NCBI RefSeq assembly: GCF_031769215.1
Contig: NW_026782003.1
Coordinates: forward strand, 4,154,001-4,218,000
Direction of reading: 5' to 3'
DNA length: 64,000 nucleotides
Source of the DNA: Ylistrum balloti
Lineage: Eukaryota
This document shows positions 2,485-33,800 of the stretch, piece by piece. Both the position numbers and the translations under genes were made by a program. The notes beneath the pieces were generated by a model, which ran no database searches, was not told where the DNA came from, and saw only the letters and a program-made list of their open reading frames with translations. Within the stretch, counting starts at the first letter, position 1. Every line of letters starts with the position of its first letter.

Positions 2485-3703
2485 TATTTTACCAGGGTCA
2501 TATTTGTAATGTTTGATTAATGGGATTTTGAAACAATGGTTTGGAATTTTCATTTAAATTAACAAATGATCAGAATATGTTTACAAAAGATTTTAGAGAT
2601 CCTGTTGTGATTTACCTTGTGTTTTCATCAGTAGACTACATATTGAAGAGCTATAAGAATAATAATGATACACGTTATAGTAGATCTATGCTACAACTAT
2701 CATATGCATTTGTATGGAAGAGTTTGTCTTAGATCAAAATTATTTCTTCAATTGTTAGGTCTCTAACTGCATTTTTATACTCATTTAAAACAAACCTAGC
2801 TGTTTATAAAACTGAAGTTAACATAAAACTTACAGATAATCCTGCTGCTAAATTTGTATCACTTAGGCAACAGAAATAAACCTGTTAAGCGAAAACCAGG
2901 AACAAACATATCATGATATCTCATGCTTCACCAATACAGATGACCAGTATAGATGACCAATACTGATGTGAATTGTTGATATTTCACAATCAGATATGAG
3001 CTACAAATCTGGAGCCAAAGATACTTTAATTTTTGTTCATGCCTCTACAGATGACAAAGGGCTCGAGAGTTCTGTCCGCCATGAAAATGAGACAGGGTCT
3101 GTCAGGTCATTATATTGCTTCGATATGTTTGCAATGATTGGGACATAGTCCTATAACTATAGACAGGTAGGAAAAAACTATTTCCCCTGGAGATAGCATT
3201 TATACAACAACCTCAGACAACAGAATTGATTACTGTACTACAAATCTACATGGGGTCAGATATGCAGAGTCAAAATTGCTTGTGATATCTACAGCAACAG
3301 GAAGTGGCCATCATCGTCTACTAAACAGTAACCATCAGACACAGAATGGAATAACTCTGACAGATACATTGATATACAGGTTAACTGGACATATCAAACA
3401 TCCTTCGGTACACATGCACTAAGGTTTCTTCACTGTCTATCTTGAGTTTAGAATCCTATTGTTAAATTGGGCAGTTAATTTCAAAGCAGTGCTGGAGTCT
3501 TTTTTACAGTAAATAGGATGCTTGGTGAAAAATGTGTACACAAGTAGATTTGCAAGATGTCTACTCAAAGCTGAAGTGGAAGCAAGCATTAATATGATAA
3601 TGAGAATTTCCCTAAGTGTTGTGCCTCCAAATCAATGCAGTCAAGCTTTCTAACATACAGACCACCCTAACCTCATACAGGCCAGAATTTGGCCACTGGT
3701 CAC

Positions 3704-3830
3704 TTAAGATTTCTGGTCAGAATTTGGACGGGCCTGCAGTTGAGGGTCTATGTAGACTTTGTTACTTTGTGTTGCTACCCAAGTGTGGAAAGCTGTGGGT
3801 AAGCGTTCTGTGTCGAAGCGATTGCCATCA
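3704..3830 (-). CDS. CCDC17: Alternative terminal exon B (DGNRFDTERLPTAFHTWVATQSNK...DQKS*)
   Basis: aatatttcag|T phase-2 acceptor, TAA at 3706-3704; peptide is homologous to exon A. Confidence 0.65.
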
Positions 3831-6800
3831 CTGAAATATTACAGTAGGATATACAGCTACTCACACCGATTCATATGGTTGACAAATGCCCACCATCTTG
3901 TGTTAGTAAATATTACAGGTATTACCAGGGGTTCAAATGTATCATTCTTCTATAATAATTTAAGCTGTAGGTGATTGTATCATGTAAACTGAAAACTTTT
4001 TTATTAAATTTTGATGAATTTTTGACTGATCTGATGCAGGCAAAAAATATTTTGAGTTCTGAAGTCATATGTTCAGAATGATTTGATTTTAAAACCCCTG
4101 CAGCCTATGGTAGTTAGATAAGTGATACACATGCAAATGTATTCCCTCATATAACTTGTGCTACCAGACACTGTTACCTTACACTTGATACAAAGACAGA
4201 TTAACACAACACCAATAATTAGTCTGGGTCATCAATGTCGGTTATAGGGTCTGGTCGTGCAGTGGGAGGTGGTCGGGACGTCTTTGTGTGCTGGGTGGAC
4301 ACCCAGGTGTGATGTGCAGTGGGCACATATCGATTGGGACTGTAAAAATAGCCAAGGAATACAAAAATAACATCAGAATACCTCAACATGCTGTCTTCAG
4401 GTGGCAACATACATGTAACATATTAAATGATTTCCCTAACTACACAACCAAGGATAATTCAATGTATCCTGTCTCTATNNNNNNNNNNNNNNNNNNNNNN
4501 NNNNNNNNNNNNNNNNNNNNNNNNNNNNNNNNNNNNNNNNNNNNNNNNNNNNNNNNNNNNNNNNNNNNNNNNNNNNNNNNNNNNNNNNNNNNNNNNNNNN
4601 NNNNNNNNNNNNNNNNNNNNNNNNNNNNNNNNNNNNNNNNNNNNNNNNNNNNNNNNNNNNNNTTCAGTAAACAATTAAGAACATACAAGCTTTACTAATT
4701 TTTCATAAATCCAGATGAAATCCAGAGGCACAACACCAAGGTCCTATTCCACATATAATTCATAAGATCTAACACCAAAGCCAAATTGATGTGAAACCTA
4801 AGACAAATGAATATAACAACTAGAAAAATGTTCTTGTGAACAAAATCATATGTTTCCACATATTAACTGAGAACTGATTATTTATTATGAAATATTTACC
4901 AGCTTCAATACTTAAAATGACCTTTGACCTAGTGACATTGACTTAGTCATGAGTATCTCTATTGATAAATTTTGTTTCATAATGGTATGACGAAATGTTT
5001 ACCAGTAAAAGTTTTTAAATTTGACCTTGACCTCTGACCTGGTGACACTGACCTGTGGTAAGATGACTTGCCATTTGATTTCAGTCAACTTTGCTTCTAT
5101 ACATCATAATAGCATTGTGAAATAAGCAGAAACATTTGGTAAAATTCTATCTTAAGTCACATATCTTTTCAAATTCGAAGTTACAACAACTCCATTTACA
5201 TTTGATAATCAACACTTGTTGGTGATGAAATTTAAGTTTCAACAATAGGAAAACAACTTAATGAATGAAAATTTTGTAATTATTTGACCTTAACCTTGAC
5301 TTTAACCTTGAGACCAAGGTCAGAAAGACCTAATTTCAGTGCACTGTACACCATCTGTGGGTGATGCAATTATCATTGTAGTTTTATTAAGTCATTTTCT
5401 GAACAAGAATATGCTGAAAATTCTGTACTTATTTGACCTTTGACCTAGACATGAAAGGCACTGTGACTAAATTTTGGTGCGCTGCACAACTTGTAGGTGA
5501 TACATGAATGTTTCAAGTTTCAGCAAGATACCTTAAGCATTTTAAAAGAAAACACTCTGGATAAGCTTTTTATAGCATCAGTCCCTTTTTGGGGTAGCTA
5601 GCATTATATAGTCATTATCATGCATTCAATTAAATGTACTAAATACATACAGAATTAATCACTCGATATATAAAGGATTATCAAAATAGGATCAATAATA
5701 TGAATGCATGCATATATGACGAATACAGACTCTCATATACTTTTAAATAACAGCTGACTTTTAACCCACAAGTTCATGGGTAAATTACAGCTTAAATCTC
5801 TATATATAGACCAAATTTCACATTCAATTGGCCTTCAGGATTCCAAGGTCAGCACAAGATAAATGCACTCTAGCTTTTTTGTTCTAATAGAGGGTGGATG
5901 ACAGAAAGCACCTATAACAGCACTGGATTTAGCACAATAGGTAAATACCTATGATATAACAGCACTGGATTTAGCACAATATGGAAATACCTATGATGGA
6001 TAGCCCAACCAAGGCTGTCCATTCCTTAGCATGGGAACGGCCGTATACAAACTGAAAAAACAATTTTAAGTTAAAAAGTTCACAAAAAGGAACAGATATA
6101 TAATCTTGGGTTTATAATATCTGTGAAGAGGATATAAAACTGACATCCCTCTGGTAACCTTGAGAGAAATAACAGTGTAGAAAGTGTTCAAAGCAAAAAA
6201 ATTATTCTTAAATCATGATTGCTGTACTTGTATATTGTGATATACCCCGTATACACTTCTGAATCCAGCCATGGTACACAAGTCATCACAGTAATGGACT
6301 GTTTTTGTTATGCATTTTTACTCATTAATATTCAAGGTTTGTGTATAAATTAATGAGGTAACATAGATAGCAAGTTTACCTTTCATATAGGTAATGGGGC
6401 TCATTTTCCTAATCGTATCTATGTTACGCGGTCAGCTTCCCAACAATTTTTTTTAACAGGTACTCTGGTTTCCTTTAACAAGTTATAAAGGAGGAAAATG
6501 GGGATACTATACAGTATTGCCGTAATGCAATGTCTCGATCAACATATCATTTCATACATCTTCACTGGAACTGAAAACATCCATTACCCATATCTTTATG
6601 AAAAACTCTTTTAAATGGTCTTTTCAAAACTTTATACAGCTGTAAATAGAATTTTTAGGCCCTGCATACTAAACTCTCCAATGTAAATGGTAGCACAATG
6701 TTAACTGGTCCACATTTGCAAAACAGAACTAAGAAGTAGATAGTGTCTACTTTTAGGTGAGTATAGTCATCTCTAAGGGGTTTGTCACACTAGAAACTTT

Positions 6801-9800
6801 GTCCTGTCCACCAACCTTCCATGGCACCAGTGGTAGCCAGTTTGTTCTGACCACTATTAATAGCAACTAAACTGGGAGTTGAGAGTGCGAGGAGCAGAGA
6901 TGACCATGAGTGGACCGGGGATATCATTCCTACTCCAGAACACACTGAACGGAGAAACAAACAAGGAGTCAGGGTTAGCATTCAGCACTCCTTGTTAAAC
7001 AACACTATTTCACTTCTAAAACTTTGAATTCATCATTATAACATTTCACATATAATTACATAAGATTAGTACTGTACATGAAAATATCTACATCAGTCTC
7101 CAATTTCAAGTACATAGTATCCCTCATATCTGAAGTCAACATTGTGTTAACCATAATGTTTTTATAATGAACCTATTTTACAGTAAACTTTTAAATTTTG
7201 ACAAATCAAGAAGACCTTGAAGCCTTTGTAAATAGTTGACGGCTAAATACGTTGTAAAAATCAATTTGAAATGGCAAAACAATGTTTTAACTATGTACTA
7301 TATATATTGCCAGCAACATTTTAACAATTCCTCAAACTGGGAGAGGTGATTATCACATGGTGCATTGTACATAAATTCATGGCCATTTACAACTCACCAG
7401 TCCTCTTCATACAATAAGCATTGAATATTCTACTTTACTAACCATGTACAGAATTGGATTACCAAAGGACACATCATAAACATGTGTCAGGCCAACTCCG
7501 AAATTTTCCCCTAACTAGGTCACACAAATTCATTAAGACATATGTCAAATATGAGTTCAATTCATTTAAAATTTTTTAGAAAATTATTTTTGTGTCAGGC
7601 TGGAATATGAAAATATGTCTATTTCATGAGTACAGCTGTACACTTTTCTTCCTATTGGCTGTAGTTATATAACCAGACTGGAGAGAAAACATGATAAACA
7701 GGATAAGATACTACAAAGTACTTACTATTGGTCGTACGGCTGCATAGGTTCTACGTCCACATAGGGGCGCTGCATCATCCATGGCATGTCTGCATTGTTC
7801 TGGAAACGGAGACAATTCAGAACAAAATATTACAACCGGAAATATCAATATCACAATACATCATTGTTAACTCACAAAGAATAATACAGTTTCTTAATGA
7901 TCGACGGAACGTGTTGTTTTGGTTGTAAAAACACCTATGAAATACTATCTTAAACTCATTAATAATCACTGATTGTTATTACCAGCTGAAAAATCCTTCA
8001 ATTTCATGTAAAATATTTAAATAGTGAAGTATATATTTTTGTCATATATGAAACCAAGTTGTTATTTTTTGGTCAGTAATATTTTTAATCTTTCATTTAT
8101 TAGAATAATTAGTTGTTTAAATGAATAGCTGATGGTCTTTGCTGTTTAACTGAAACATGTTAGAAAATTGTCAAAACAGACAAATATATTAAGTTTTTTC
8201 ATCAGCTATACCTGGGTTCTGACCTTATGGTCAGCCATATAGCAAGCACTCGATGACCTGACCCTTGTTTTAGTAGATGTTATACTTAACAAACCATATG
8301 AATGATTAATATGAAAGTCCATTGTTTTACTAATTAATTGTCATACTAGCCTCAAAATTAATATTTATTCATAAAACTTAACACTGAAACATTTACGATA
8401 AGCCAGTTAATAGCAGCATAAGAAGACACAATAATATAGGAGATATGACTTGCATAGATTACGAAGCAGCAATATCTGTTACATATGACACAAATCAACA
8501 ACCAACACACAGAGGTTTACAGTCTGTCAGTAACCTGTCCCCATATTAAGGGGTATATACCTCCAGTTCTGCCAAACTATACCGTACACTGTCCCCCATA
8601 AACATTCCTGGTACTGTCCTTTTGGTGGCAGGGGACATGGGGGTCACACCTGGCTGGTGCCAGCCCCCCTGGGGGAATAATGTCATCACATCAGACACAT
8701 TTCAATTCAGCCAAAGTAACCAAGAATGAACCAAATACAACATACTCACAAAAGTTAAGAATGGGTGATCTGTAATTAAGAGATTTTCGTCCAGAGATTT
8801 TATATTCGTACAGAAGTCAGTACTAGTATCTAGACTTATATATCATTGATAAACCACCACAGTTCAGTTTGTTAAACATATTTATGATCTACTTACAACA
8901 AAATCTGAGATTTTTTATATCAAGATTGATGAGGAGGGAGGTGGGTTTTCTGTTTTAACAAGTTCTGTTGTAGGAGGGATGTGGACTGTCTGTTTTAACA
9001 AGTTCTGTTGTTTACATACATACATACATACCGGTGCTGGAGGAGGGAGGTGGGTTGTCTGTTTTAACAAGTTCTGTTGTTTACATACATACATACCGGT
9101 GCTTGAGGAGGAAGCCAGTTGTCTGTTTTTAACAAGTTCTGTTGTTTACATACATACATACCGGTGCTGGAGGAGGAAGGCGGGTTGTCTGTTTTTAACA
9201 AGTTCTGTTGTTTACATACATACATACCGGTGCTGGAGGAGGGAGGTGGGCTGTCTGTTTTAACAAGTTCTGTTGTTTACATACATACATACCGGTGCTG
9301 GAGGAGGGAGGCGGGTTGTCTGTTTTAACAAGTTCTGTTGTTTACATACATACATACATACCGATGCTGGAGGAGGGAGGTGGGCTGTCTGTTTTAACAA
9401 GTTCTGTTGTTTACATACATACATACCGGTGCTGGAGGAGGGAGGCGGGTTGTCTGTTTTAACAAGTTCTGTTGTTTACATACATACATACATACCGATG
9501 CTGGAGGAGGGAGGTGGGCTGTCTGTTTTAACAAGTTCTGTTGTTTACATACATACATACCGGTGCTGGAGGAGGGAGGCGTGCTGTCTGTTTTAACAGG
9601 TTCTGTTGTTTAAGCAGCTCTATCTCATTCTGAAGCTGTAACATCTTCCTCAGCTGTTCCTCCTGAAGGCGTCGTAGCTGTGCCTCAAGTTCATCTGTCA
9701 GGATACAAGGTCAAAGTCAAGGTCAAACTTTTGGGGCCTTACCTCAAGGTCAAAAATAATAGGTTGCAATACTGACAATATATTTATATTTGAATAAATT

Positions 9801-12800: not shown

Positions 12801-15800
12801 TGGATTTGATGGTTTCCATTGTCAATGGTATTTTGTGCTGTTTCGGCTGCCATTAAACTCCTGTTATGCGAGAAGGAAAGGCTTATAAACCAGTCTTTAC
12901 ATTTGGACATTCAGATTTTGACCTGTCATCAGCTCTTTCTGTGGTGTTGAGCCATAAATCTAGCTGGCTTACAGTGGATTAGTGAACTCCGAAGTGAGTA
13001 GCGACCTGCTGTTGAGTGTTACCTTCAATTAGCATTTCAAGAGCACATCCTCTCTCAAGTTGGGATAGCTGTGGCATATTTGACTTGGGCTTTTTAAGAG
13101 TGACCTTGACCTGTAATCTGGCAACTTCTCATTAGATTCTGGCCATCATTGCTTGATAGGTCCATAAGAAAATATTTGTCAGTAAAATAATTCAAATTTG
13201 ACCTTGACCTTTCAATGATGACCTTGACCTGTGATCAGGTGACTTTTCATTTGGTTACAGTCAAGTATGTTTCATTACATCATAAAGAATTATTTATTAG
13301 TAACATCTAGAAAAACATTTTTGTGCTGTTGAATCCGATTTCTATTTCTAGAAATGATGACCTTGACCTTTGACCTCTGAACATTGAAAATCATTGGAGA
13401 GCTAGCAGTAGGAATCAATGGAGGGAGTCTGAGTATGATTATTCAAACAGAACTGAGGATATTATGTAGAAAAAACAATTTTCTATTTACAGTTATAGTG
13501 ACCTTCCTTCAAAAAAGCATCGGGTAAAATTTGAGTGGCCCTAAAGAACTTGAGACATTGTGCTGAAAGTATGGACAGGCAGAACATACTCATTCAAGTA
13601 TACTTGCAGGTTGCATTAATAGTTCATTCAGTACACAGACTAACCAATCTGATAGCTATGGGAAACAGCATTACCGACATGGGGCCCTAATTATAAGTAA
13701 GTCATATTTTGAGATAAAACAATATCTTTATTTAAACTATAAAGAATATACAACGTACTATACATCAGGATAAACATAAGATATTGTAGTACATAATTCC
13801 AGTGTACTGGCAAGAAATTAAAATCCTAGTAAAAATTTATTCAAACCAAAATATTCAAGGTATTCAACAGAATGAAAGAACATCAACCGATGTAGCTTTA
13901 ACTTAATATCACTCTGGTAATTAAAATATATACTCAATTACACTTCTGTATTACCTATAATATAAAATATTTTTGTACCCAATGTTCCTGCTGAAATATA
14001 CCCATTAAGGACCCAATCATAGATAAAGAAAGGTACCTTTTGAGGCAATGTACATTATTTACATTTTAAGCCTGCCATATCAGGTACTCCATTTTCCTCC
14101 TCGAGTCCTAATCTGTCTGGCCACTAAGAGCATTGAATATACAAGGTAAGTTAATATAACTCACAAATATTGTAAATTAACAAAAAGTCTGTATTTAATC
14201 CTTAGATAATAACATAAATGAAAGACGTTATTATAAGTACAGGGGTAATGTACATATATTGTCTCACAGCTGATGATAGAGTATGACCTTATATGGTAAT
14301 ATCTGTACGTATGGCAGTGGATGGTCAAGAAACGTAAACATAACAAACATTTGCTAAAATCTGGACTTAATGTTGTGTTCAGCGATAATGACCTGTAAGA
14401 TCCCAGCTAAACCTTTAGCATGGAGACAGCAATTCAGTAAAGAAGAAAATTAATATTCCTTTTTCAAACATCTGAAGTATTGTTCTCTCTTCCTCTGGTT
14501 GGATGTGTTTCTTAAGAAGACTTGAAATAGATTTATGCAGAGTCTTAGAGTAAAATATACTGGAGAAAGTCCCCTAAGGTTTTTTTTAAGCTTTTTATGA
14601 AACTGAACAACTCACATCACAAGGCAAGTTTATGTGAAATTTGTCATAATTACCAGGCATGTATTGTAATCATAAAACAAGTATTTAATGTACCTTGAGA
14701 AGACAGAAAACTGAGATAAGTCTTTTCAATGGTATATGTTATAATATCTCGCCATCCTACATTTGCCATGACCCCTGACCTGTTACCATGGTAACCAGCG
14801 ATATCCTCTATTAACAGTGATCAGAATTGTAAGTACTTCTGACCCAAGATGTGACTTGGAAAGTAGGTCGCAGTTACCTACTTTAAAAACCAATGGTCAA
14901 GTTATGATATAGACAGTCTATACAGGCATATCACTTAAATGTCATTTTTCTTAAATATAAATGTGTGCTACATCTTGTGAAATATATAACAGCATATTCA
15001 AGCACCAGATGAAATGCGTAGTCAAGTAAATATAGTAATTCAATGTAATCCATTAGATATATATATATATATATATACTGTTGTGATAAAGGACACTTTT
15101 AAGAATTCCTGATATTTCACTGGTATATGTTATACAGTATCTGACCAACCTACACAGTTCACCACATACGATAAGAATCATAGAACAGTTCTAAATCACG
15201 CGCTGAGTATGTACAAGTCATACATAAATGTTTCAGACGTCTACTCTTTAATGGTTTATTTACATAACCTCCTTATCTTGACATCATAAACCAAACTATT
15301 CCAGAATGTCTGCCTAGTGCACCGAATCAACCTGTCAACCATGCAAGGTCATAGTCTGGTCCACTTGTCCATCATACTAGGTCACACCTTGGTCCACCTG
15401 TCCATCATCCTTGGGCACATCTAGCCACATGTCTTTAATCCGAGGTCACACCCTGATCCATCTGTCACCATCCAAGGTTAAATCTGGTATATCTGGTGGT
15501 GATCCAAGGCGACAATCTGGTCCTCCATTCCACAAAAACAGGTTCTCAACAACACCCTGATTCACCTGTCTTAAATCCAAGGTCATAATCTGGTCCATTT
15601 TTCAAGGTCACATACTAGTCCATAGTCCCAGGCCACACTCAGGTCCATCTGTCCACACCCAAAGGTCATACCCTAGAAGGCTGTCCCAAAACAACTCCTT
15701 TGTCCGCATAGCTATTCCTAAATATTATCGGTCTACCTAGTTGTCTGTACATATGTATGATATCACTTTGCGGAGATGTTGGTTTACGATTGTTATCATA

Positions 15801-18800
15801 CGGATTCCTTGGAAGAATATCAGTATTACTTTTACCACCTTCCTGAAAGTGATTTTGGTGGTGAGAATGACCACCTCTACCCCAGTTGGGCTGGTAGTAG
15901 TTATCTGCAAGGTTAGAAAAATGGGAATGAGATCGTAAATAGTCATGCTTGTGTCCATGTGGTTTCTCATCACTCTTATCCTTTTCATCATCAGAATCGA
16001 AAAACGGCATAGCTCTGTATTCATCTTCTTTCTTTTTTTCTAATTTCAAATATTCAGCAAAAGACCCACGTGGTTCCTCTCTTTCATCAGTGATTTCCCT
16101 CAGGTCAAGGCGAGGAACAGTGGGCTTGTTAGACTTGTCTGATTTCAGTTCTTTACTTTTCAGCTGTTTTATCTCCAGATCTGCCAACTCTAGATCCAAA
16201 CGATTAAGTTCTCTCTGATATTGTGATATAGTCACATTCTTGTGAGGTTCGCTACTACTTTGACCTTGGTTAGCTCCATGACCTTGAATAGGCCTCTGAC
16301 CATGGTAAAGACTATTTGGATAAGAACCATCGATGTGACTTAGCTGGTGTGCCACAGATGACTGATGGTCTGTGGTACTTTTCTTGCTTTCACTTAGCGA
16401 CAAACTATGTACAGAAGACTTCCGGGACCTCTCTCCATTATGACTTTTCTCAGACAATTGCTGCACAAGATGGCCATACTGTGCCTCAAATCTATCGAGT
16501 CTGTCATGGGGATCCCTCTGGGATGGAGCCTGTAATATGGGATTAAAGCTGACCCTAGGGTTAGTGTCTTTAGGGTATTGCCTACCTTCTCGGTCAGACT
16601 TCTTCCGGTTATGAAAGTTCTGTTCCTGTAGAAGCATCAGCTCTTTGTGTAGTCTTTCGTTCTCTATCTCCAGCATCTGTAGCTGGCCAAGATGGTCCTT
16701 CTTGTCTGTAACATACATATAACTGACCATTACTTACCAGTAATTCACCAACTTGTCTAGGCAAATGTGTTAGCATTCAGTTGACATATTTATTGAACTG
16801 TCGCACCTAATAAAAATATGAAGTTTGATACTTTAAGGAACTGGTTTTAATAATGCTTTCTTTTTCTAAGACAGCTTTTATTTTTATTTAAGAAATTTTA
16901 CTTAGCAAAAAATCAAACATATTTAAATACTGTCTTAATAAAATCAAAACCTTCTTACATAAAGTTCACCTGTATTGAACAATTATATACTACAAAACCA
17001 CTATCTAGACTCTCTTTTGTGTCTGTAATCTGCTTCATACCATCTTCCTTGTTTGTCTATGGATACCAATATCTTCTGCTCCACATATACAGGGTTGATA
17101 GTTACTGTTTGTTCCATGTCGTCTTTGTTAACAGTGTCTATAGCAATCAATGTTTGACAGTACATGTTAAATTACCTTTTTTATCTGGAGCCTGTTTCAT
17201 GCCATCCTCTATACTTTGAGCCTCAGCCTGCATCTGTGCCATCTGTGCCAGCACATCAGGATCATTACCACCATTTTGGAGATATGCCTGCCTCATTGCA
17301 CTGCAACATTATACAAACAGGATTTATTAGCTGTACTTAATTTTCTTTATTTGTTGTTGGGTTCATTACCCCAAGAACAAATATGGTGGTCATAGTTGGG
17401 GGTGGGGGTGGGGTGGGGGTGGAGTGGGGGTGAGGGTGGGGGGTGGGGTTGGGGGTGGGGTTGGGGGGGGGGGGTGGGTGAGTGGGGCTTTGTATGTAGC
17501 AGCTGGTTAAAGTGCTCTCCTTAGTTACTTTTCTAAAGTTACAAAAAACTTTCTAGAGCTAGTTTTCTTTTAACTTCTGAAAAAAAAACCCATCAAGATT
17601 GAAAAAAAATACCATTTACAACAAATTTTGTTGTGTAAATTCTTCATTTTATCCTATGACTTATAAAGCATTGCATTATCAATGGTGTGATATAAATGGT
17701 GAATCCAGCCTCCCACTGACCACAGACTAAGCAGGGATATCTTTTGTAGATTTTGTAAGTAAGTTTTATTAGCGTGCAGTGTGATGTACCCACCTGATCT
17801 CGGCCACCAGTGAGTTGCCATAGTATACAGGATAAACGTAAGACTTCCGGTCAGTGGCTGGCAATGCTGGGGGCTGGGGCTGTGTGGCCTTCTCTACCTC
17901 TCTAAAACACAGAAACAGGCTCATAAAAACTTGGTTAAGTCAGCCTCCATTATATACAGACACCTGTCTAGTATGTACACATTCCGTTATATACAGACAC
18001 CTGTCTAGTATGTACACATTCCGTTATATACAGACACCTGTCTAGTATGTACACACAGACACCTGTCTAGTATGTACACATGACGTTATATACAGATACC
18101 TGTCTAGTATGTACACATGACGTTATATACAGACACCTGTCTAGTATGTACACATTATGTTATATACAGACACCTGTCTAGTATGTACACATTCTGTTAT
18201 AAACAGACACCTGTCTAGTATGTACACATTCTGTTATATACAGACACCTGTCTAGTATGTACACGTTACATTAAATACAGAACCTCCCTTCTGTTGATGA
18301 TAACAGTAAAAACCTGTCTGTACCAACACCTCTGCATACAGACCCCTGGCCAGTCAGCAGTCCATCACTGATCATTATAGTGCAACAGTAACAACCTGAC
18401 TACAGCTGTCCAGTGTAACATTACAGCATATCAGTAACAAACTATGTTGATAACACACAGAAACATGTCTTTCTAACATTTCTCTATATGCACGTCATAT
18501 ACAAATTAACAAGATGTAATGTCAGTCAAATGTTAGTTAAGTCATGATTCACTAAAGAAGGCATATACAACTACCTGAAAGCTTAAGACTAAAAAATATT
18601 GATTCCAATTTTAAACATGTAGAGACACATAATGACTGATATACCAATATATATTCTATTAGCAATATTGATTTTAACAGATCCATGCGTACTTAATTTA
18701 TTTTACAGTTTCTGACAAGACAATATCTCAATTCATGTTTATCAATACCAAACAACTGGATCACCAAACTGAAGGCAGTGATTCCATGCCTTAGTGCACC

Positions 18801-27800: not shown

Positions 27801-30800
27801 CGAAATAAAATCTAATTATTTTCCTTCTAGTGTCACCTAATATGTTATACACCTAAACTAAACATAAAGAATGTGTGTTAATGTTTAATTACTAAAGACA
27901 GAAATAAGGGTTGGGAATCTAAAGTCAAAAGATTTTCTGTGACGCAAATAAACAAAAAACAATGATCGGTATTATTACAAACAATAAAAAAAAATCCACA
28001 AATTGAGAACATGTTACAGTGAATGTCAACCACCATGTGGCACCACACACAACAAGAGAATAATACCTTGGACTGCTGTAAAAATAAGTTGTTTTCTGTA
28101 CATGTTATGATTAAAAATCCCAAAATAACATAGTAACACATTAATCACAGCACACAGTGTACATGTAATAGTACATTTAGAGATCATCAACTGGGGTTTA
28201 TCTTGATAATGATGAGGTTTAATTCAAATTCATTACTCATTAATGCAAAAATGATATTTGTTGAACCAACTTAATATCTTCAATGACTGATAAAAAAAGT
28301 TTTCCAAAGACATGGTTACAATCATAAAAACTTCCACGGCACAAATTTCCAACTCAACCATCTGTATAGATAGACAGTTCCAAAATTTTTCAAGGAAGAA
28401 CATTATTGTTACAATTTCTGGGTTTCACAAATTATCATTTCTTGTACCTTAACTGATTTCTGTTAAATTTATTACAAGGATTGTTTGTTCTAATCAATCA
28501 ATACACATACATGCAGTACATTAAGCACATCCAGCACAAACACAAGTGGGTTTTTTTTCTTCTACCATGAAGGATTATCTGTGCTTAAGGCTGTTAATAC
28601 ATTTGTGCAAGGTACATACCTTCCTCTTTTTCTGAAACATGGCAGGTGGTAATTGTATGTTAACATTACACTCTAGATTTCTCAGGGCCAAACACAATTA
28701 ACAACACATTTTGAGAAAACACACTTCAGGTTTATCAAAAACATTCAACTTGTCAGTCAAAAGAGCTTGTGTTTAAAAAGAAAACATTGGAAAAAATGAT
28801 AAAAACAAAAAACTTGTAATTTCTGTAAAGTCATTTCATCTGGATTGGCGACAAAGACACGACAGCTCTGCTGTGGTATTATACACTGATAGCTGGTACT
28901 TATACAAATTCTTATGTTATACATACAACACAAAGTTTACACAGACATGAAGATATAACTTAAGGGTATACACAATATGTCCTCAGTATTTACACCTTTG
29001 ATTTAAATACTACATTCAAGTGGTGTGCAAAAGGGAAAAAATTTAAATCATTTTCTAGTTTTTAATTTTCTTAGGCAAGAAAACAACCCATTGAACTTAC
29101 TGAAGAAAGTTGTATGGTATGTGGAGTCTAATACAACAGTAGAGTAACTTCAACACTGTGCAAGGTAACAGCCAAAAGGAGGAATTGGTCAAATCACACA
29201 GAATTTGTAGCATCAAACCATTGATCTTCATTTGGTGTAGTATTTAAACCAATGTAAAACTGCGAATTATATAATTAAAAACACACACTCTCAAAATCTC
29301 TTAAAACATAAAACATTAACAATAATGTCTATAGACAGAATGAGCTCTGGAAAAACATCCTGCAATCACGATGTTCAAAAAATAGTCAAGTTTAACTTAC
29401 ACGAAGCCTAAATCAATAAAAGTAATGTTTGGATATACATTGTATCTAAAAAGAAATACAAAATTTATCCAGGAGATTAAAGAAACCAAAAAAATACAAT
29501 ATAAGTTTTCCTTTTCAGCTACAAACCTCAACCTTTGTTAAATGTAAGTTTTAAATAGACAGTGTAACTCGTGTTTCTGGATAACAGTAAAACTATAACC
29601 TTGCAATAATACAACTGTAGGACTTTTTGCGAATACCCAAACTGGACCAAACACGATATTAAGTCACAATTTGTCAAACCACAGTGGACTTACATCATCA
29701 TCAAGATGAATGCTCATGCTAGCATCGGACATGACTGACCGATTATCCTGACGAGATGGACGGTCAGTGTGCTGTACTACAGGTTGATAATTCTTGCGTG
29801 GTCTCCTGTCAGACGGCTTCATGACTGGACGTCGATTACGGTCTGTGGATATTTTTTCTTTCAAATTCTCATACTGAAAAATTCCCCAGATATTTCTCGT
29901 AAATATTTGACTCAGAACATAAGATCAGAAAATTTATTTGTATAAATTTTGAATTCTTTGAATGTGCGATTTACTTAATACAAACTTGGCTGTTCAAATG
30001 TGGCTGTAACATATATACATGTGTAAGAATGAAAAGGAACTGTAAATGTCCAAACAGGAAGTGTCAAACAGGTTTGATTTCAATAAGTTTCACTGCCATT
30101 TCATAGTAATGTTAACAATGAAAATAACACCGATTTTAATGAGTGTTCGTGGGAATACTGAACAAAATGTGTTGCTCAATGAAAACCGATTGATCATAAA
30201 TAAAATGCTTGATAGAGATGTCCATGTAAGCTGTTCTAATTGTCTCAAATATTTCTTTCAACATCTTTTCATTTTTTTTAATTAACATGTAAGAGATGTG
30301 TAAAATTAATGCTCAGGAAATTCTCCGTTACACACGAGACAATAGTTAGCAGTAGAACACACCGTTAAATCCAAATTGATGTTAGTTTTGTGTGTACAGA
30401 ACAAACACATTTTCCAATCACAGTTATGTTTATTAGGAAAAACTCCTAAACAACCTTATGTTGTTTAAAATCATATCTATAAACTTCTGTTCAAATCCAT
30501 TTCTTTTATGTGTAGTGAAAAAATCTCTAACAGATGGGAAATAAATATTCTTGTGAAAATATTTAGCCATCATAACTGAAATAGTGTCCTGTTTTAGAGT
30601 GATAAGAAAATTATCTAGACTTTGCAAGCTGGCTCTGAGCCTCACCTCCAGTTGAAGATGTCGGACTTCTTGGTCATGCGAGAGAGGCAGGTTTGAACGA
30701 GCTCGACTAGGATGACGTGTTGACCAGCCAAGCTTACGGTCTGTGTCTTCCAAAGTGTCTAGCAAGATCCTCTCCTCTAGATTGCGCAAGTCTCGAATTT

Positions 30801-33800
30801 TATTGCGATTCTCCTTATAATTTTTCAGTTCCGCCACCTTAGCAAATTTACATTTAGAAAAATGACTTTTTTTCACTAAAGTAATTTGGTACTGACGCAT
30901 TCAATAGAGAAGGATTTATTATATACATTAATCATGACTTTGTCATAGAGCAGGTTCATCTGACATTCGAAGATACGGCCAATATACAGAATATCATTAA
31001 GCATTATCTGTCTATTATTGCTGAAAATAAAGAGAAGGTGTTCATACAAAGATGGCTGCCGACTGAGGTACTGGTGAAAATAAACAGTAAGTGTTCATGC
31101 AAAGATGGCTGCCAACTGAAGTACTAGTAAAAATAAAGAGTAGGAGCTCATACAAAAGATGGCCGCTGATTGAGATACTGGTAAAAAAATAATTAGTAGA
31201 TGTTCATGCAAAAGATGGCTGCCAGTTGAGGTACTGGAGAAAATCAAGAATTGATGTTCATACAAAGATGACTGCCAGTTGAGACAATGGTGAAAATAAT
31301 GAGTAGGTGTTCATACAAAGATGGCTGGACTGAATATATAGTCATCAAATATTGCTTACAACAACTTTTTCTTTGACCTAATAATACTAGAATTATTCAT
31401 GGAGGATTCAAAGGCATAATGGAATCTCTATGAATGTTGCGAACACTGTTAACCTGCTGCTCTTCTGTATTTTAGAATTTCAAATAAAAGAGTACATTGA
31501 GTTTGTAAAGGACATGTGATCTGCTTATATAAAAGGCTAGGCCAACAACTTCTCATTGAGTCTTTAGTGATACATTGTAGTATACAGCAATGCCAGTATA
31601 TAAGGCCATTGTGTCCAACTGTATGTGTACAATGTGAATCCTGGTGGAAAAAAGTCCTTACTCTGTATCTAACAGCTGGGCTTGAGATCTAACATCAGTA
31701 AAGGTTGACATCTGATATCATGTGGACATTAGACAGTAGAAAAAGAATCGTGATGGAAAGAAACATGAAGAAACCAATGAAAAGAAAATGTGTAATTTTA
31801 CCTGAGGAACCATACAGGTAACATAGACATTGTCATGTGCCAACAGAAATATAAAAGGTATTGATGACTATGTAAGTAAAAAGAAAATGAAAACAAGAAA
31901 TAACAGGACCTTTATACCACTTGTATCATCGTTATTTTGTTAATTGTTCAATCATTAATGATTTTATCGATATCTTATTTCAAACTCATGTATACAATCT
32001 ATAAACACAACATTACAGGTGTTTTCTTTTCTATGTCATTAGATACCGTCTTTAAACACAAACAAAATAATGTACATCATGCTGACATTTTGTTCTATCA
32101 ACATTCTAATGCCATTTATTTAATCTGTCATCTTCAACACTCAATCAAGTCTACTTGAACATCTCAACATTCAAGTTTACTTTAAAGTCCATTGCATTTT
32201 AACAACTATCAGTATATTTTCCAAAACACATCTCCCCATTCCTAAACACACCAAAAAACTACCTCCTTATGTCTGACCTCCCTAGAAACGACCTCCTTAT
32301 ACCTGACCTCCTTAGAAACTACCTCCTTATACCTGACCTCCCTAGAAACGACCTCCTTATACCTGGCCTCCCTAGAAAATACCTCCTTATACCTGACCTC
32401 CCTAGAAACTACCTCCTTATACCTGACCTCCCCAGAAACTACCTCCTTATACCTGACCTCCCTAGAAACTACCTCCTTATACCTGACCTCCCTAGAAACT
32501 ACCTCCTTATACCTAACCTCCCTCGAAACTACCTCCTTACACCTGACCTCCCTAGAAACTACCTTCTAATATCCATCCCTCTCTGTGACTTACTTTCTTA
32601 TACCAGTAGTGATATCCAGACTTATTATTACTCTGGTTTCCTACCACACGAAATCTCTCATGTGCTCCGAGCCAACAGCTTGTCAAATAGATTGAGCTTA
32701 TAGTTTTATACATGTACTCCAACTTGGAAACTACTACCCAACTAACTTGAAAATACTTTTTTATCTGTAGCCCTCAGGAAAATGAAAACTGCATAGTCAT
32801 CAATTTATAAATTTAAGGAAAGTGGATCTGCATTTCCTTTCCTTTGTATATTTAAAGTCAATATAAAAAAATGTAGTTTTGGAAAAGAGTTTGATGGTTG
32901 TGAAGATGCAATGTAAGCACTACCAGCACCAATCAAATTTCAATCAGCAGTGTTGCTATGGTAACTACATTATAACATCAATCATACAGTCCTACACCAT
33001 GCTCATGCTTGTCAACATGCATTCTTACTTAACTATAATTTCAAAGCTACCTACAGCTGTTCATTCATTCAGAAATTCAATTCAATTTACAAGTATAAAT
33101 CAAAAAGATGAAAACAATAAATGTTCACTTTAAAACAAAAACTTCTTGATAAAAAGGACTTGTCGACATCACTACTGGATTTCATTGTCAACACCATTCT
33201 ATAAGTCATGTTAACTTACTACACATTATGCACTAGCACAATACGACAGTTCAAGTCAAGACAACATCTGTCACATCAAGTAAGCAAAACTAAAAGACTA
33301 CTGGCGTGAAAGTCTACAGATATTCAAAACATGCATATATATATACACTAAACACTTTGGTTTACATTTTGAGAATTTGTTGAACACAGGATTTGATGGA
33401 AGGGATCTTGCATGCGTTTCCATTTCATATGAAATATCTTGAAACAAGTCTTAGAACTTTTCAATTGATCAAGCCTCTGGCAACGTGAAATGAAAAATCT
33501 GTAACCAGTTTTATAAATCTCACATACGAAGAGAAAATAAATGCAAGATTCTGTTCATCACATAACTTGTTAAATTGCCTTCTGTTGTCTGTTATAACAA
33601 CAAACTTTGGTCAACATAACGGTTACCACATTGTAAGAAAGGGTGTGGCTTATATTCTGGTGTGTCTTTTATGTGGATCAAATAAAAAAAATGCTCAAAA
33701 ACCAGCCCTGTGGCTTATACTCAGGCGCGGTTTATAGCCCGGAAAAATATAGTAAATATACACGGAATTTTTTAACTCAACTCACATAAGTTAAGTTAAG

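What the first reader, a model, noticed from the sequence alone, without database searches (positions are those of the whole stretch)
3704..4339. Duplicated, homologous alternative last exons of the CCDC17-like gene
Seen: two phase-2 acceptor exons about 500 bp apart, each ending in its own TAA, encode clearly related peptides: P-NRY----VPTAHHTWVSTQHTK...ARPD versus DGNRFDTERLPTAFHTWVATQSNK...ARPN. An AATAAA (- strand 4005-4000) lies between them. Both splice in frame to the exon ending at 7726. Nucleotide similarity is low while the PTAxHTWVxTQxxK motif is kept. Inference: an old exon duplication under purifying selection gives mutually exclusive C-termini chosen by alternative polyadenylation. 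I do not recognise the motif.
Basis: partly seen in the sequence, partly recalled or inferred. Interest (0 to 1): 0.75.

Follow-up and report, generated by a model that had tools for sequence, protein, structure and literature searches.

The report
Duplicated alternative C-terminal exons, CCDC17-like gene
A bivalve CCDC17-like gene carries two anciently duplicated, stop-containing 3' coding exons that give the protein one of two related ~40-residue tails; the pair is real and also present in mussels, but it is an ordinary example of a well-known kind of alternative splicing.

Summary
Exon A (4339-4219, minus strand) and exon B (3830-3704) each follow an AG acceptor. Each completes the same Tyr codon left open by the exon ending at 7726, and each ends in TAA. 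Their peptides are each other's best match in the whole window (E about 1e-4). Mytilus galloprovincialis has both exons in the same order about 600 bp apart. Introns are unalignable and synonymous sites are saturated, yet exon A keeps 31 of 39 residues and exon B 19 of 40. GenBank already lists one Mytilus isoform for each tail. A transcript contig from a third species aligns to the window across the 7726-to-3830 junction. The invariant core is HTWVxTQ. A more distant homologous locus shows only one such exon.

The gene identity is supported: orthologues carry Pfam CCDC17_middle_coil.

Selection by alternative polyadenylation is not shown. The AATAAA at 4005-4000 exists. However, Mytilus transcripts splice two further small stop-carrying exons onward to a shared downstream 3' exon, and donor-like sites follow the stops of A and B.

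No RNA run was available for this genome, so use of either exon here is inferred. C-terminal swaps of tandem-duplicated exons are common, so this is a new member of a known kind. The scan has noted this stretch once before (s1-262816).

The parts
7726..7799 (-). Constitutive penultimate coding exon (24 codons plus TA; ends ..PYDQ). It is followed by the donor GTAAGT. An internal alternative acceptor (CAG ending at 7770) matches the one used in Mytilus isoforms.
   Evidence: Sequence. It is 87% identical to P0008 in tblastn and 81% identical in nucleotides to Mytilus L001 27897-27982. pN 0.09 against pS 0.84.
4219..4339 (-). Exon A: 1 base plus 39 codons plus TAA. Tail with the HTWVSTQH core, a proline-rich middle and an acidic DIDDPD end.
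   Evidence: Its orthologue at L001 30516-30641 keeps 31/39 residues, including the C-terminal DIDxPD and the stop position. It is used in Mytilus isoforms P0013 and P0016.
4340..4360 (-). Acceptor of exon A: pyrimidine tract plus AG at 4341-4340.
   Evidence: The equivalent tract plus AG is present in Mytilus.
4172..4177 (-). Donor-like GTAACA after AAG, 41 nt past the stop of exon A. It is a possible 5' splice site that would make A a cassette exon.
   Evidence: Mytilus has GTAAGT 17 nt past its exon A stop. The single motif exon of the distant locus L005 has GTAAGT 2 nt past its stop. This is inference only.
4000..4005 (-). AATAAA, the only canonical poly(A) hexamer between exon A and exon B, 214 nt after the stop of A.
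3704..3830 (-). Exon B: 1 base plus 41 codons plus TAA. Tail with the FHTWVATQS core and a variable hydrophilic end.
   Evidence: Its orthologue is at L001 31119-31244. It is used in Mytilus isoforms P0010 and P0012. Transcript contig L003 aligns to 7798-7726 and then 3830-3759.
3666..3671 (-). Donor-like GTTAGG after GAG, 32 nt past the stop of exon B.
   Evidence: This is a weak consensus match and inference only.
3025..3030 (-). ATTAAA, the first canonical poly(A) hexamer downstream of exon B.
4479..4662 (.). Run of N (184 bases) in the intron upstream of exon A. By position, a counterpart of the Mytilus extra exon X could lie here.
   Evidence: Position of exon X in Mytilus.

Best explanation
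Exons A and B are paralogous copies of one ancestral 3' coding exon of a CCDC17-like gene (zinc finger plus coiled coil). The duplication happened before the lineage of this bivalve separated from that of Mytilus. Each copy has its own acceptor in the same phase and its own stop codon. A transcript that joins the exon ending at 7726 to 4339 therefore makes a protein with the A tail (HTWVSTQH core, proline-rich stretch, acidic DIDDPD end). A transcript that skips A and joins 7726 to 3830 makes the B tail (FHTWVATQS core, variable hydrophilic end). Because A lies upstream and carries a stop, use or skipping of the A acceptor decides the C-terminus. The shared invariant core HTWVxTQ is most likely a short docking motif in an otherwise flexible tail, and the differing ends would tune it. 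Shown here: the homology, the phase, conservation of both copies, and use of both in Mytilus gene models. Inferred: use of both in this species, the way the transcript ends after A, and any function of the tail.
For: Reciprocal best hit within the window. Both exons are found in the same order in Mytilus galloprovincialis L001, while the introns do not align by blastn. NG86 for window against Mytilus gives pN/pS of 0.13/0.83 for A and 0.34/0.91 for B, compared with 0.09/0.84 for the constitutive penultimate exon. GenBank isoforms with each tail exist on two Mytilus contigs. That annotation was built from PASA transcript alignments with a refinement round for alternatively spliced exons (PMC7653742). 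Spliced transcript contig L003 from a third species aligns to the window up to 7726 and from 3830. The reading frame is continuous from exon 16703-16586 through 9695-9561 into 7799-7726. A second DNA data set (X1, about 1.8% different) shows only one listed difference in the two exons, synonymous at 3725, against 16 in about 830 flanking bases. That last point is weak.
Against: There is no RNA evidence from this genome: the only run holding the stretch is DNA contigs. The A-tail isoform in Mytilus is known here only from gene models, not from an independent transcript contig. The function of the motif is unknown: there is no Pfam hit and no PDB relative. A more distant homologous locus (L005) shows a single motif exon, so the pair is not universal.
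Confidence: 0.82

Rival explanations
1. Same two tails, different mechanism. A and B are not last exons but stop-carrying cassette exons that are spliced onward to a shared downstream 3' UTR exon. The choice is then made purely by splice-site selection and not by alternative polyadenylation. The stop sits less than 50 nt from the next junction, so the message would escape nonsense-mediated decay.
For: In Mytilus, transcript contig L007 joins the penultimate exon to a 30-nt stop-carrying exon C and then to L001 31752-31901, which is downstream of B. Contig L006 joins the penultimate exon to another stop-carrying exon X and then to the same downstream sequence. Donor-like sites lie 41 nt (window A), 17 nt (Mytilus A, perfect GTAAGT), 32 nt (window B) and 2 nt (L005, perfect GTAAGT) after the stops.
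Against: AATAAA lies 214 nt after the stop of A and before B. Mytilus has three AATAAA 280-330 nt after the stop of B and before the shared exon, which fits B being a true terminal exon. The window donors are only partial consensus matches in AT-rich DNA. No counterpart of the shared exon could be found in the window.
Confidence: 0.4
2. Only exon B is used in this species. Exon A is a decaying duplicate that merely keeps an open frame.
For: The transcript evidence that aligns to the window (L003) is for B only. The tails of P0010 and P0011 found by search are B-type.
Against: Exon A is better conserved with Mytilus than exon B (31/39 against 19/40 residues). Substitutions are concentrated at synonymous sites, and the acceptor, the stop position and the C-terminal DIDxPD are kept, while the surrounding intron is unalignable. 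Mytilus gene models use it.
Confidence: 0.06
3. The resemblance is chance between two short open frames in a 3' region.
Against: E about 1e-4 against the whole six-frame window, with nothing comparable elsewhere. The core HTWVxTQ is invariant in six sequences from at least four genomes or transcriptomes.
Confidence: 0.01

Closest known systems
Tandem duplicated exon substitution events that give homologous alternative C-termini (for example the three duplicated 3' exons of tropomyosin genes; 77 of 236 human events swap C-terminal regions, PMC9741552)
   Same: Adjacent homologous exons in the same phase with one upstream donor. Each message uses one copy. The pair is ancient, both copies are under purifying selection, and the tail is probably exposed and flexible.
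   Different: Found here in a poorly studied CCDC17-like gene of bivalves. The tail is a short unannotated motif rather than part of a known fold. The cluster holds further non-homologous mini-exons in Mytilus.
Mutually exclusive terminal exon clusters in Drosophila (pip; the 3' variable regions of PGRP-LC, chosen by competing RNA structures; PMC9013439)
   Same: An array of alternative 3' exons derived by tandem duplication, with the proximal acceptor competing against the distal one.
   Different: No conserved intronic element that could act as docking or selector sequence was detectable between the window and Mytilus. Only two homologous copies are present.
Annotated isoforms of the Mytilus galloprovincialis orthologue (VDI38781.1 / VDI38782.1 and VDI16103.1 / VDI16107.1, 'hypothetical predicted protein')
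   Same: The same two tails, the same exon order and spacing, and the same upstream neighbour (mago nashi).
   Different: They are deposited without name or comment. No paper found here describes the exon pair or the motif.
Vertebrate CCDC17
   Same: N-terminal C2H2-like finger and the CCDC17 middle coiled coil (Pfam PF28454 on the bivalve orthologues).
   Different: In Mytilus the CCDC17_C domain (PF28455) sits on a separate gene model 9 kb downstream. The bivalve short isoforms end in the HTWVxTQ tail instead. Whether vertebrate proteins have this motif was not tested.

Membership tests
Tandem duplicated exon substitution (homologous alternative 3' coding exons) | Two neighbouring exons of one gene are homologous to each other | tested here: met
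   BLASTP 16/34 identical, E 2e-7. Reciprocal best hits in the whole window, E about 1e-4.
Tandem duplicated exon substitution (homologous alternative 3' coding exons) | Both copies fit the same upstream donor in the same phase | tested here: met
   Both start with T after AG and complete TA-T. Mytilus isoforms read ..PYDQ-Y-tail for both. L003 aligns across 7726/3830.
Tandem duplicated exon substitution (homologous alternative 3' coding exons) | Both copies are kept by selection in other species | tested here: met
   Orthologous pair in Mytilus L001. pN 0.13 and 0.34 against saturated pS. Introns are unalignable.
Tandem duplicated exon substitution (homologous alternative 3' coding exons) | Transcripts carry one copy or the other | not testable with these tools
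   No RNA run holds this stretch; the one run is DNA contigs. In Mytilus the gene models carry one tail each.
Alternative last exons chosen with alternative polyadenylation | A poly(A) signal after the proximal exon and before the distal one | tested here: met
   AATAAA at 4005-4000.
Alternative last exons chosen with alternative polyadenylation | Transcripts that end at the proximal site | not testable with these tools
   No RNA data. Mytilus contigs L006 and L007 show neighbouring mini-exons spliced on to a shared 3' exon instead.
CCDC17 | CCDC17 middle coiled coil (Pfam PF28454) | tested here: met
   There are precomputed PF28454 hits on P0008, P0010, P0011 and P0003. The window exons are 57-87% identical to P0008 and 41-86% to P0003. 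The local Pfam copy lacks this model, so the window protein itself is assigned by homology.
CCDC17 | N-terminal C2H2-type zinc finger | tested here: inconclusive
   zf-C2H2 scores 17.9 bits, E 0.004, below the 25.2-bit cut-off. The CxxC...HxxxK/H pattern is visible in the exon 36447-36268.
CCDC17 | CCDC17_C domain (Pfam PF28455) in the same protein | tested here: inconclusive
   In Mytilus it is on a separate downstream gene model. The first exon of that model gives a stop after 10 codons if joined to the penultimate exon. The window ends 3.7 kb after exon B and shows no match.
LC8 (dynein light chain) TQT-type binding motif (considered from memory only) | Anchor triplet T-Q-T (or a close variant with T/V after Q) in a short strand-forming peptide | tested here: not met
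   All six tails have T-Q-H or T-Q-S, so the motif is not filed here. The resemblance is a lead only.

The most novel reading that the evidence does not exclude
The invariant HTWVxTQ core is a previously undescribed short linear docking motif at the C-terminus of invertebrate CCDC17-like proteins. It would bind a partner by strand addition in ciliated or germ cells. The two ancient tails (acidic DIDxPD end against variable hydrophilic end) would direct the same coiled-coil protein to different partners or fates.
Probability: 0.12. Interest if true: 0.5.

Novelty: new member of a known kind. Interest (0 to 1): 0.3.

Why it matters
It gives a clean, deeply conserved case of a tandem-duplicated C-terminal exon pair outside the model organisms. 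It corrects or extends gene models for a bivalve CCDC17-like gene. It also flags a seven-residue invariant tail motif in a protein family whose function is almost unknown. It does not change any general view, because C-terminal swaps of duplicated exons are already known to be common and ancient.

Tried and rejected
- **RNA evidence:** The one run (X1) proved to be DNA contigs that cover the introns continuously.
- **Word search with the 354-aa exon:** it gave only two Logan fragments.
- **Whole-library search with the same exon:** it gave 7 weak hits, which nevertheless led to P0008 and P0003.
- **Third word search, on the tail region of P0010:** it found nothing new, probably because of the length filter.
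- **Pfam on the two tail peptides:** no hit.
- **PDB search with the Mytilus A isoform:** nothing relevant.
- **Sinanodonta locus L002:** 10 kb of flank does not reach the 3' exons.
- **Shared Mytilus 3' exon D:** trying to find it in the window by short-word blastn gave only noise.
- **Mytilus exon X:** not found in the readable part of the window; there is one weak hit at 6913-6869, E 0.1.
- **Rejected readings:** chance similarity, a relic exon A, and the LC8 TQT motif as a membership claim.

Full report
**What is there**

On the minus strand, exon A starts at 4339 after a pyrimidine tract and the AG at 4341-4340, and it ends with TAA at 4221-4219. Exon B starts at 3830 after the AG at 3832-3831 and ends with TAA at 3706-3704. 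The upstream exon is 7799-7726. It reads NNADMPWMMQRPYVDVEPMQPYDQ, leaves two bases (TA), and is followed by GTAAGT. The first T of either exon therefore completes a Tyr codon.

**Is it more than chance?**

- The two peptides align with 16 of 34 identical residues (E 2e-7 for the single comparison).
- A tblastn of each peptide against all six frames of the 64-kb window returns the other as the best non-self hit at E about 1e-4.
- The next hits are low-complexity repeats at E 0.06 or worse. There is no third copy.

**Which gene is it?**

No Pfam family matches the tails or the large exons in the local library. The whole-library search with the 354-residue exon gave only weak hits, but among them were P0008 and P0003.

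Mapping these onto the window by tblastn gives the exon chain 36447-36268, 30840-30646, 21638-21522, 20395-20216, 17897-17796, 17305-17195, 16703-16587, 9695-9561 and 7796-7728.

I read the junctions directly. The exon beginning at about 16703 ends GAAG|GTAGGC in phase 1. The next exon starts AT GAA and ends CCG|GTATGT in phase 0. The frame then runs into 7799.

The orthologues carry the precomputed Pfam family PF28454, CCDC17_middle_coil. "CCDC17-like" is thus supported. The N-terminal zinc finger scores below threshold.

**Comparative evidence**

A region search with P0008 found P0010 (Mytilus galloprovincialis VDI38781.1) and P0011 (a Logan transcript). Both end ..PYDQ-Y followed by a B-type tail.

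It contains both exons in the same order:

| Exon in L001 | Coordinates | Residues identical to the window exon |
|---|---|---|
| A-type | 30516-30641 | 31 of 39 |
| B-type | 31119-31244 | 19 of 40 |

By blastn only the penultimate exon aligns between the two species, so the introns are beyond recognition.

Nei-Gojobori counts for window against Mytilus:

| Exon | pN | pS |
|---|---|---|
| A | 0.13 | 0.83 |
| B | 0.34 | 0.91 |
| Constitutive penultimate exon | 0.09 | 0.84 |

Exon A is thus as constrained as a constitutive exon. Its acceptor, its stop position and its C-terminal DIDxPD are all kept. Exon B is constrained in its first half only.

The 90% cluster of P0010 holds the other Mytilus isoforms:

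- VDI38782.1 on the same contig, and VDI16107.1 on a second contig, end in the A tail.
- VDI38781.1 and VDI16103.1 end in the B tail.

That annotation used PASA transcript alignments, with a round to refine alternatively spliced exons (PMC7653742).

The transcript contig L003 (P0011) aligns to the window at 7798-7726 and then at 3830-3759. This is cross-species support for the 7726-to-3830 junction.

An alignment of six tails shows the invariant core H-T-W-V-x-T-Q.

**How old is the duplication?**

A more distant homologous locus (ENA contig ctg17800, loci L004 and L005) has the same exon chain. It has only one motif exon (..GHTWVHTQH.., ending in a stop) and no second copy in the 6.8 kb downstream. 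The duplication is therefore older than the split between this bivalve and Mytilus, but it is not universal.

Another note of this scan (s1-232047) calls this genome a scallop. I did not test that. If it is true, the pair predates the split of scallops and mussels.

**How the choice is made**

In favour:
- AATAAA lies 214 nt after the stop of A and before B.
- The next canonical hexamer after B is ATTAAA at 3030-3025.
- Mytilus has three AATAAA 280-330 nt after the stop of its B exon.

Against a simple picture:
- Mytilus-group transcript contigs show two further small stop-carrying exons in the same cluster. Exon X is at L001 30167-30252, upstream of A. Exon C, 30 nt and encoding FRVRWF plus a stop, lies between A and B.
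- Both are spliced onward to a shared exon that starts at L001 31752, downstream of B.
- Donor-like sites follow the stops: AAG|GTAACA at 4178/4177 in the window, a perfect GTAAGT 17 nt after the Mytilus exon A stop, GAG|GTTAGG at 3672/3671 after window exon B, and a perfect GTAAGT 2 nt after the stop in L005.

I cannot decide between the two mechanisms without RNA. I put the cassette model at about 0.4.

**Direct evidence in this genome**

None is available. The single run search returned no RNA holder. The one run is DNA contigs about 1.8% different from the window, and they cover the introns continuously. Among its listed differences only one falls in the two exons (3725, CCA to CCT, synonymous), against 16 in about 830 flanking bases. 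That direction fits constraint, but it is weak. Two of the 19 differences in that contig were not listed.

**Comparison with what is known**

Homologous alternative exons from tandem duplication are a well-described class. In the human set of 236 such events, 77 swap one C-terminal region for another, a strong enrichment, and tropomyosin genes have three duplicated 3' exons (PMC9741552). Clusters of duplicated terminal exons are known in Drosophila (PMC9013439).

The Mytilus isoforms are already in GenBank as unnamed hypothetical proteins. I found no paper describing the pair or the motif. CCDC17 itself appears in the literature mostly in gene lists and as the source of a helical ASB7 degron, which is unrelated to this tail.

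**Verdict**

This is a new member of a known kind and of modest interest.

- I did not fill the N run 4479-4662, where a counterpart of Mytilus exon X could lie.

Noticed in passing
window 15666-16730 (-), donor at 16586/16585: If the donor GAAG|GTAGGC is not used, the exon reads on as a 354-residue open frame. Other bivalves have proteins that end in such a long exon (Sinanodonta P0003, 880 aa; Logan ORFs P0001, P0009). The gene probably has a third, non-homologous long C-terminus. Only the first 50-80 residues are conserved.
   Followed up: partly
L001 30167-30252, 30923-30952 and 31752-31901: The Mytilus cluster holds two more small stop-carrying alternative exons (X, encoding VIWNAGIP..KVV, and C, encoding FRVRWF). 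Transcript contigs L006 and L007 join both to a shared 3' exon downstream of exon B. Isoforms VDI16104.1 and VDI16105.1 use exon C.
   Followed up: partly
L001 40538-42912: A separate Mytilus gene model 9 kb downstream carries Pfam CCDC17_C. The bivalve CCDC17 therefore seems split into two transcription units, or a long isoform is unannotated. Joining the penultimate exon to the first exon of that model gives a stop after 10 codons.
   Followed up: partly
window 7770-7799 (-): An internal CAG acceptor inside the penultimate exon would drop the first ten codons (NNADMPWMMQ). The same alternative is used in Mytilus isoform VDI16105.1 and in transcript contig L007.
   Followed up: partly
window 9561-9695 (-) and 8930-9612: The real exon encoding ELEAQLRRLQ..PPPAP ends at 9561 with GTATGT.
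   Followed up: partly
window 3990-4000 (-): Directly after the AATAAA there is AGTTTTCAG|TTTACATGA. This resembles the acceptor region of the Mytilus mini-exon C (TTAGTTTCAGAGTTAGATGG). It may be a counterpart, but the coding content is not conserved.
   Followed up: no
window 3400-7900: DNA run X1 differs from the window by about 1.8-2% and carries several small indels in the intron (for example 19 bases missing at 7257). It is another haplotype or individual.
   Followed up: no
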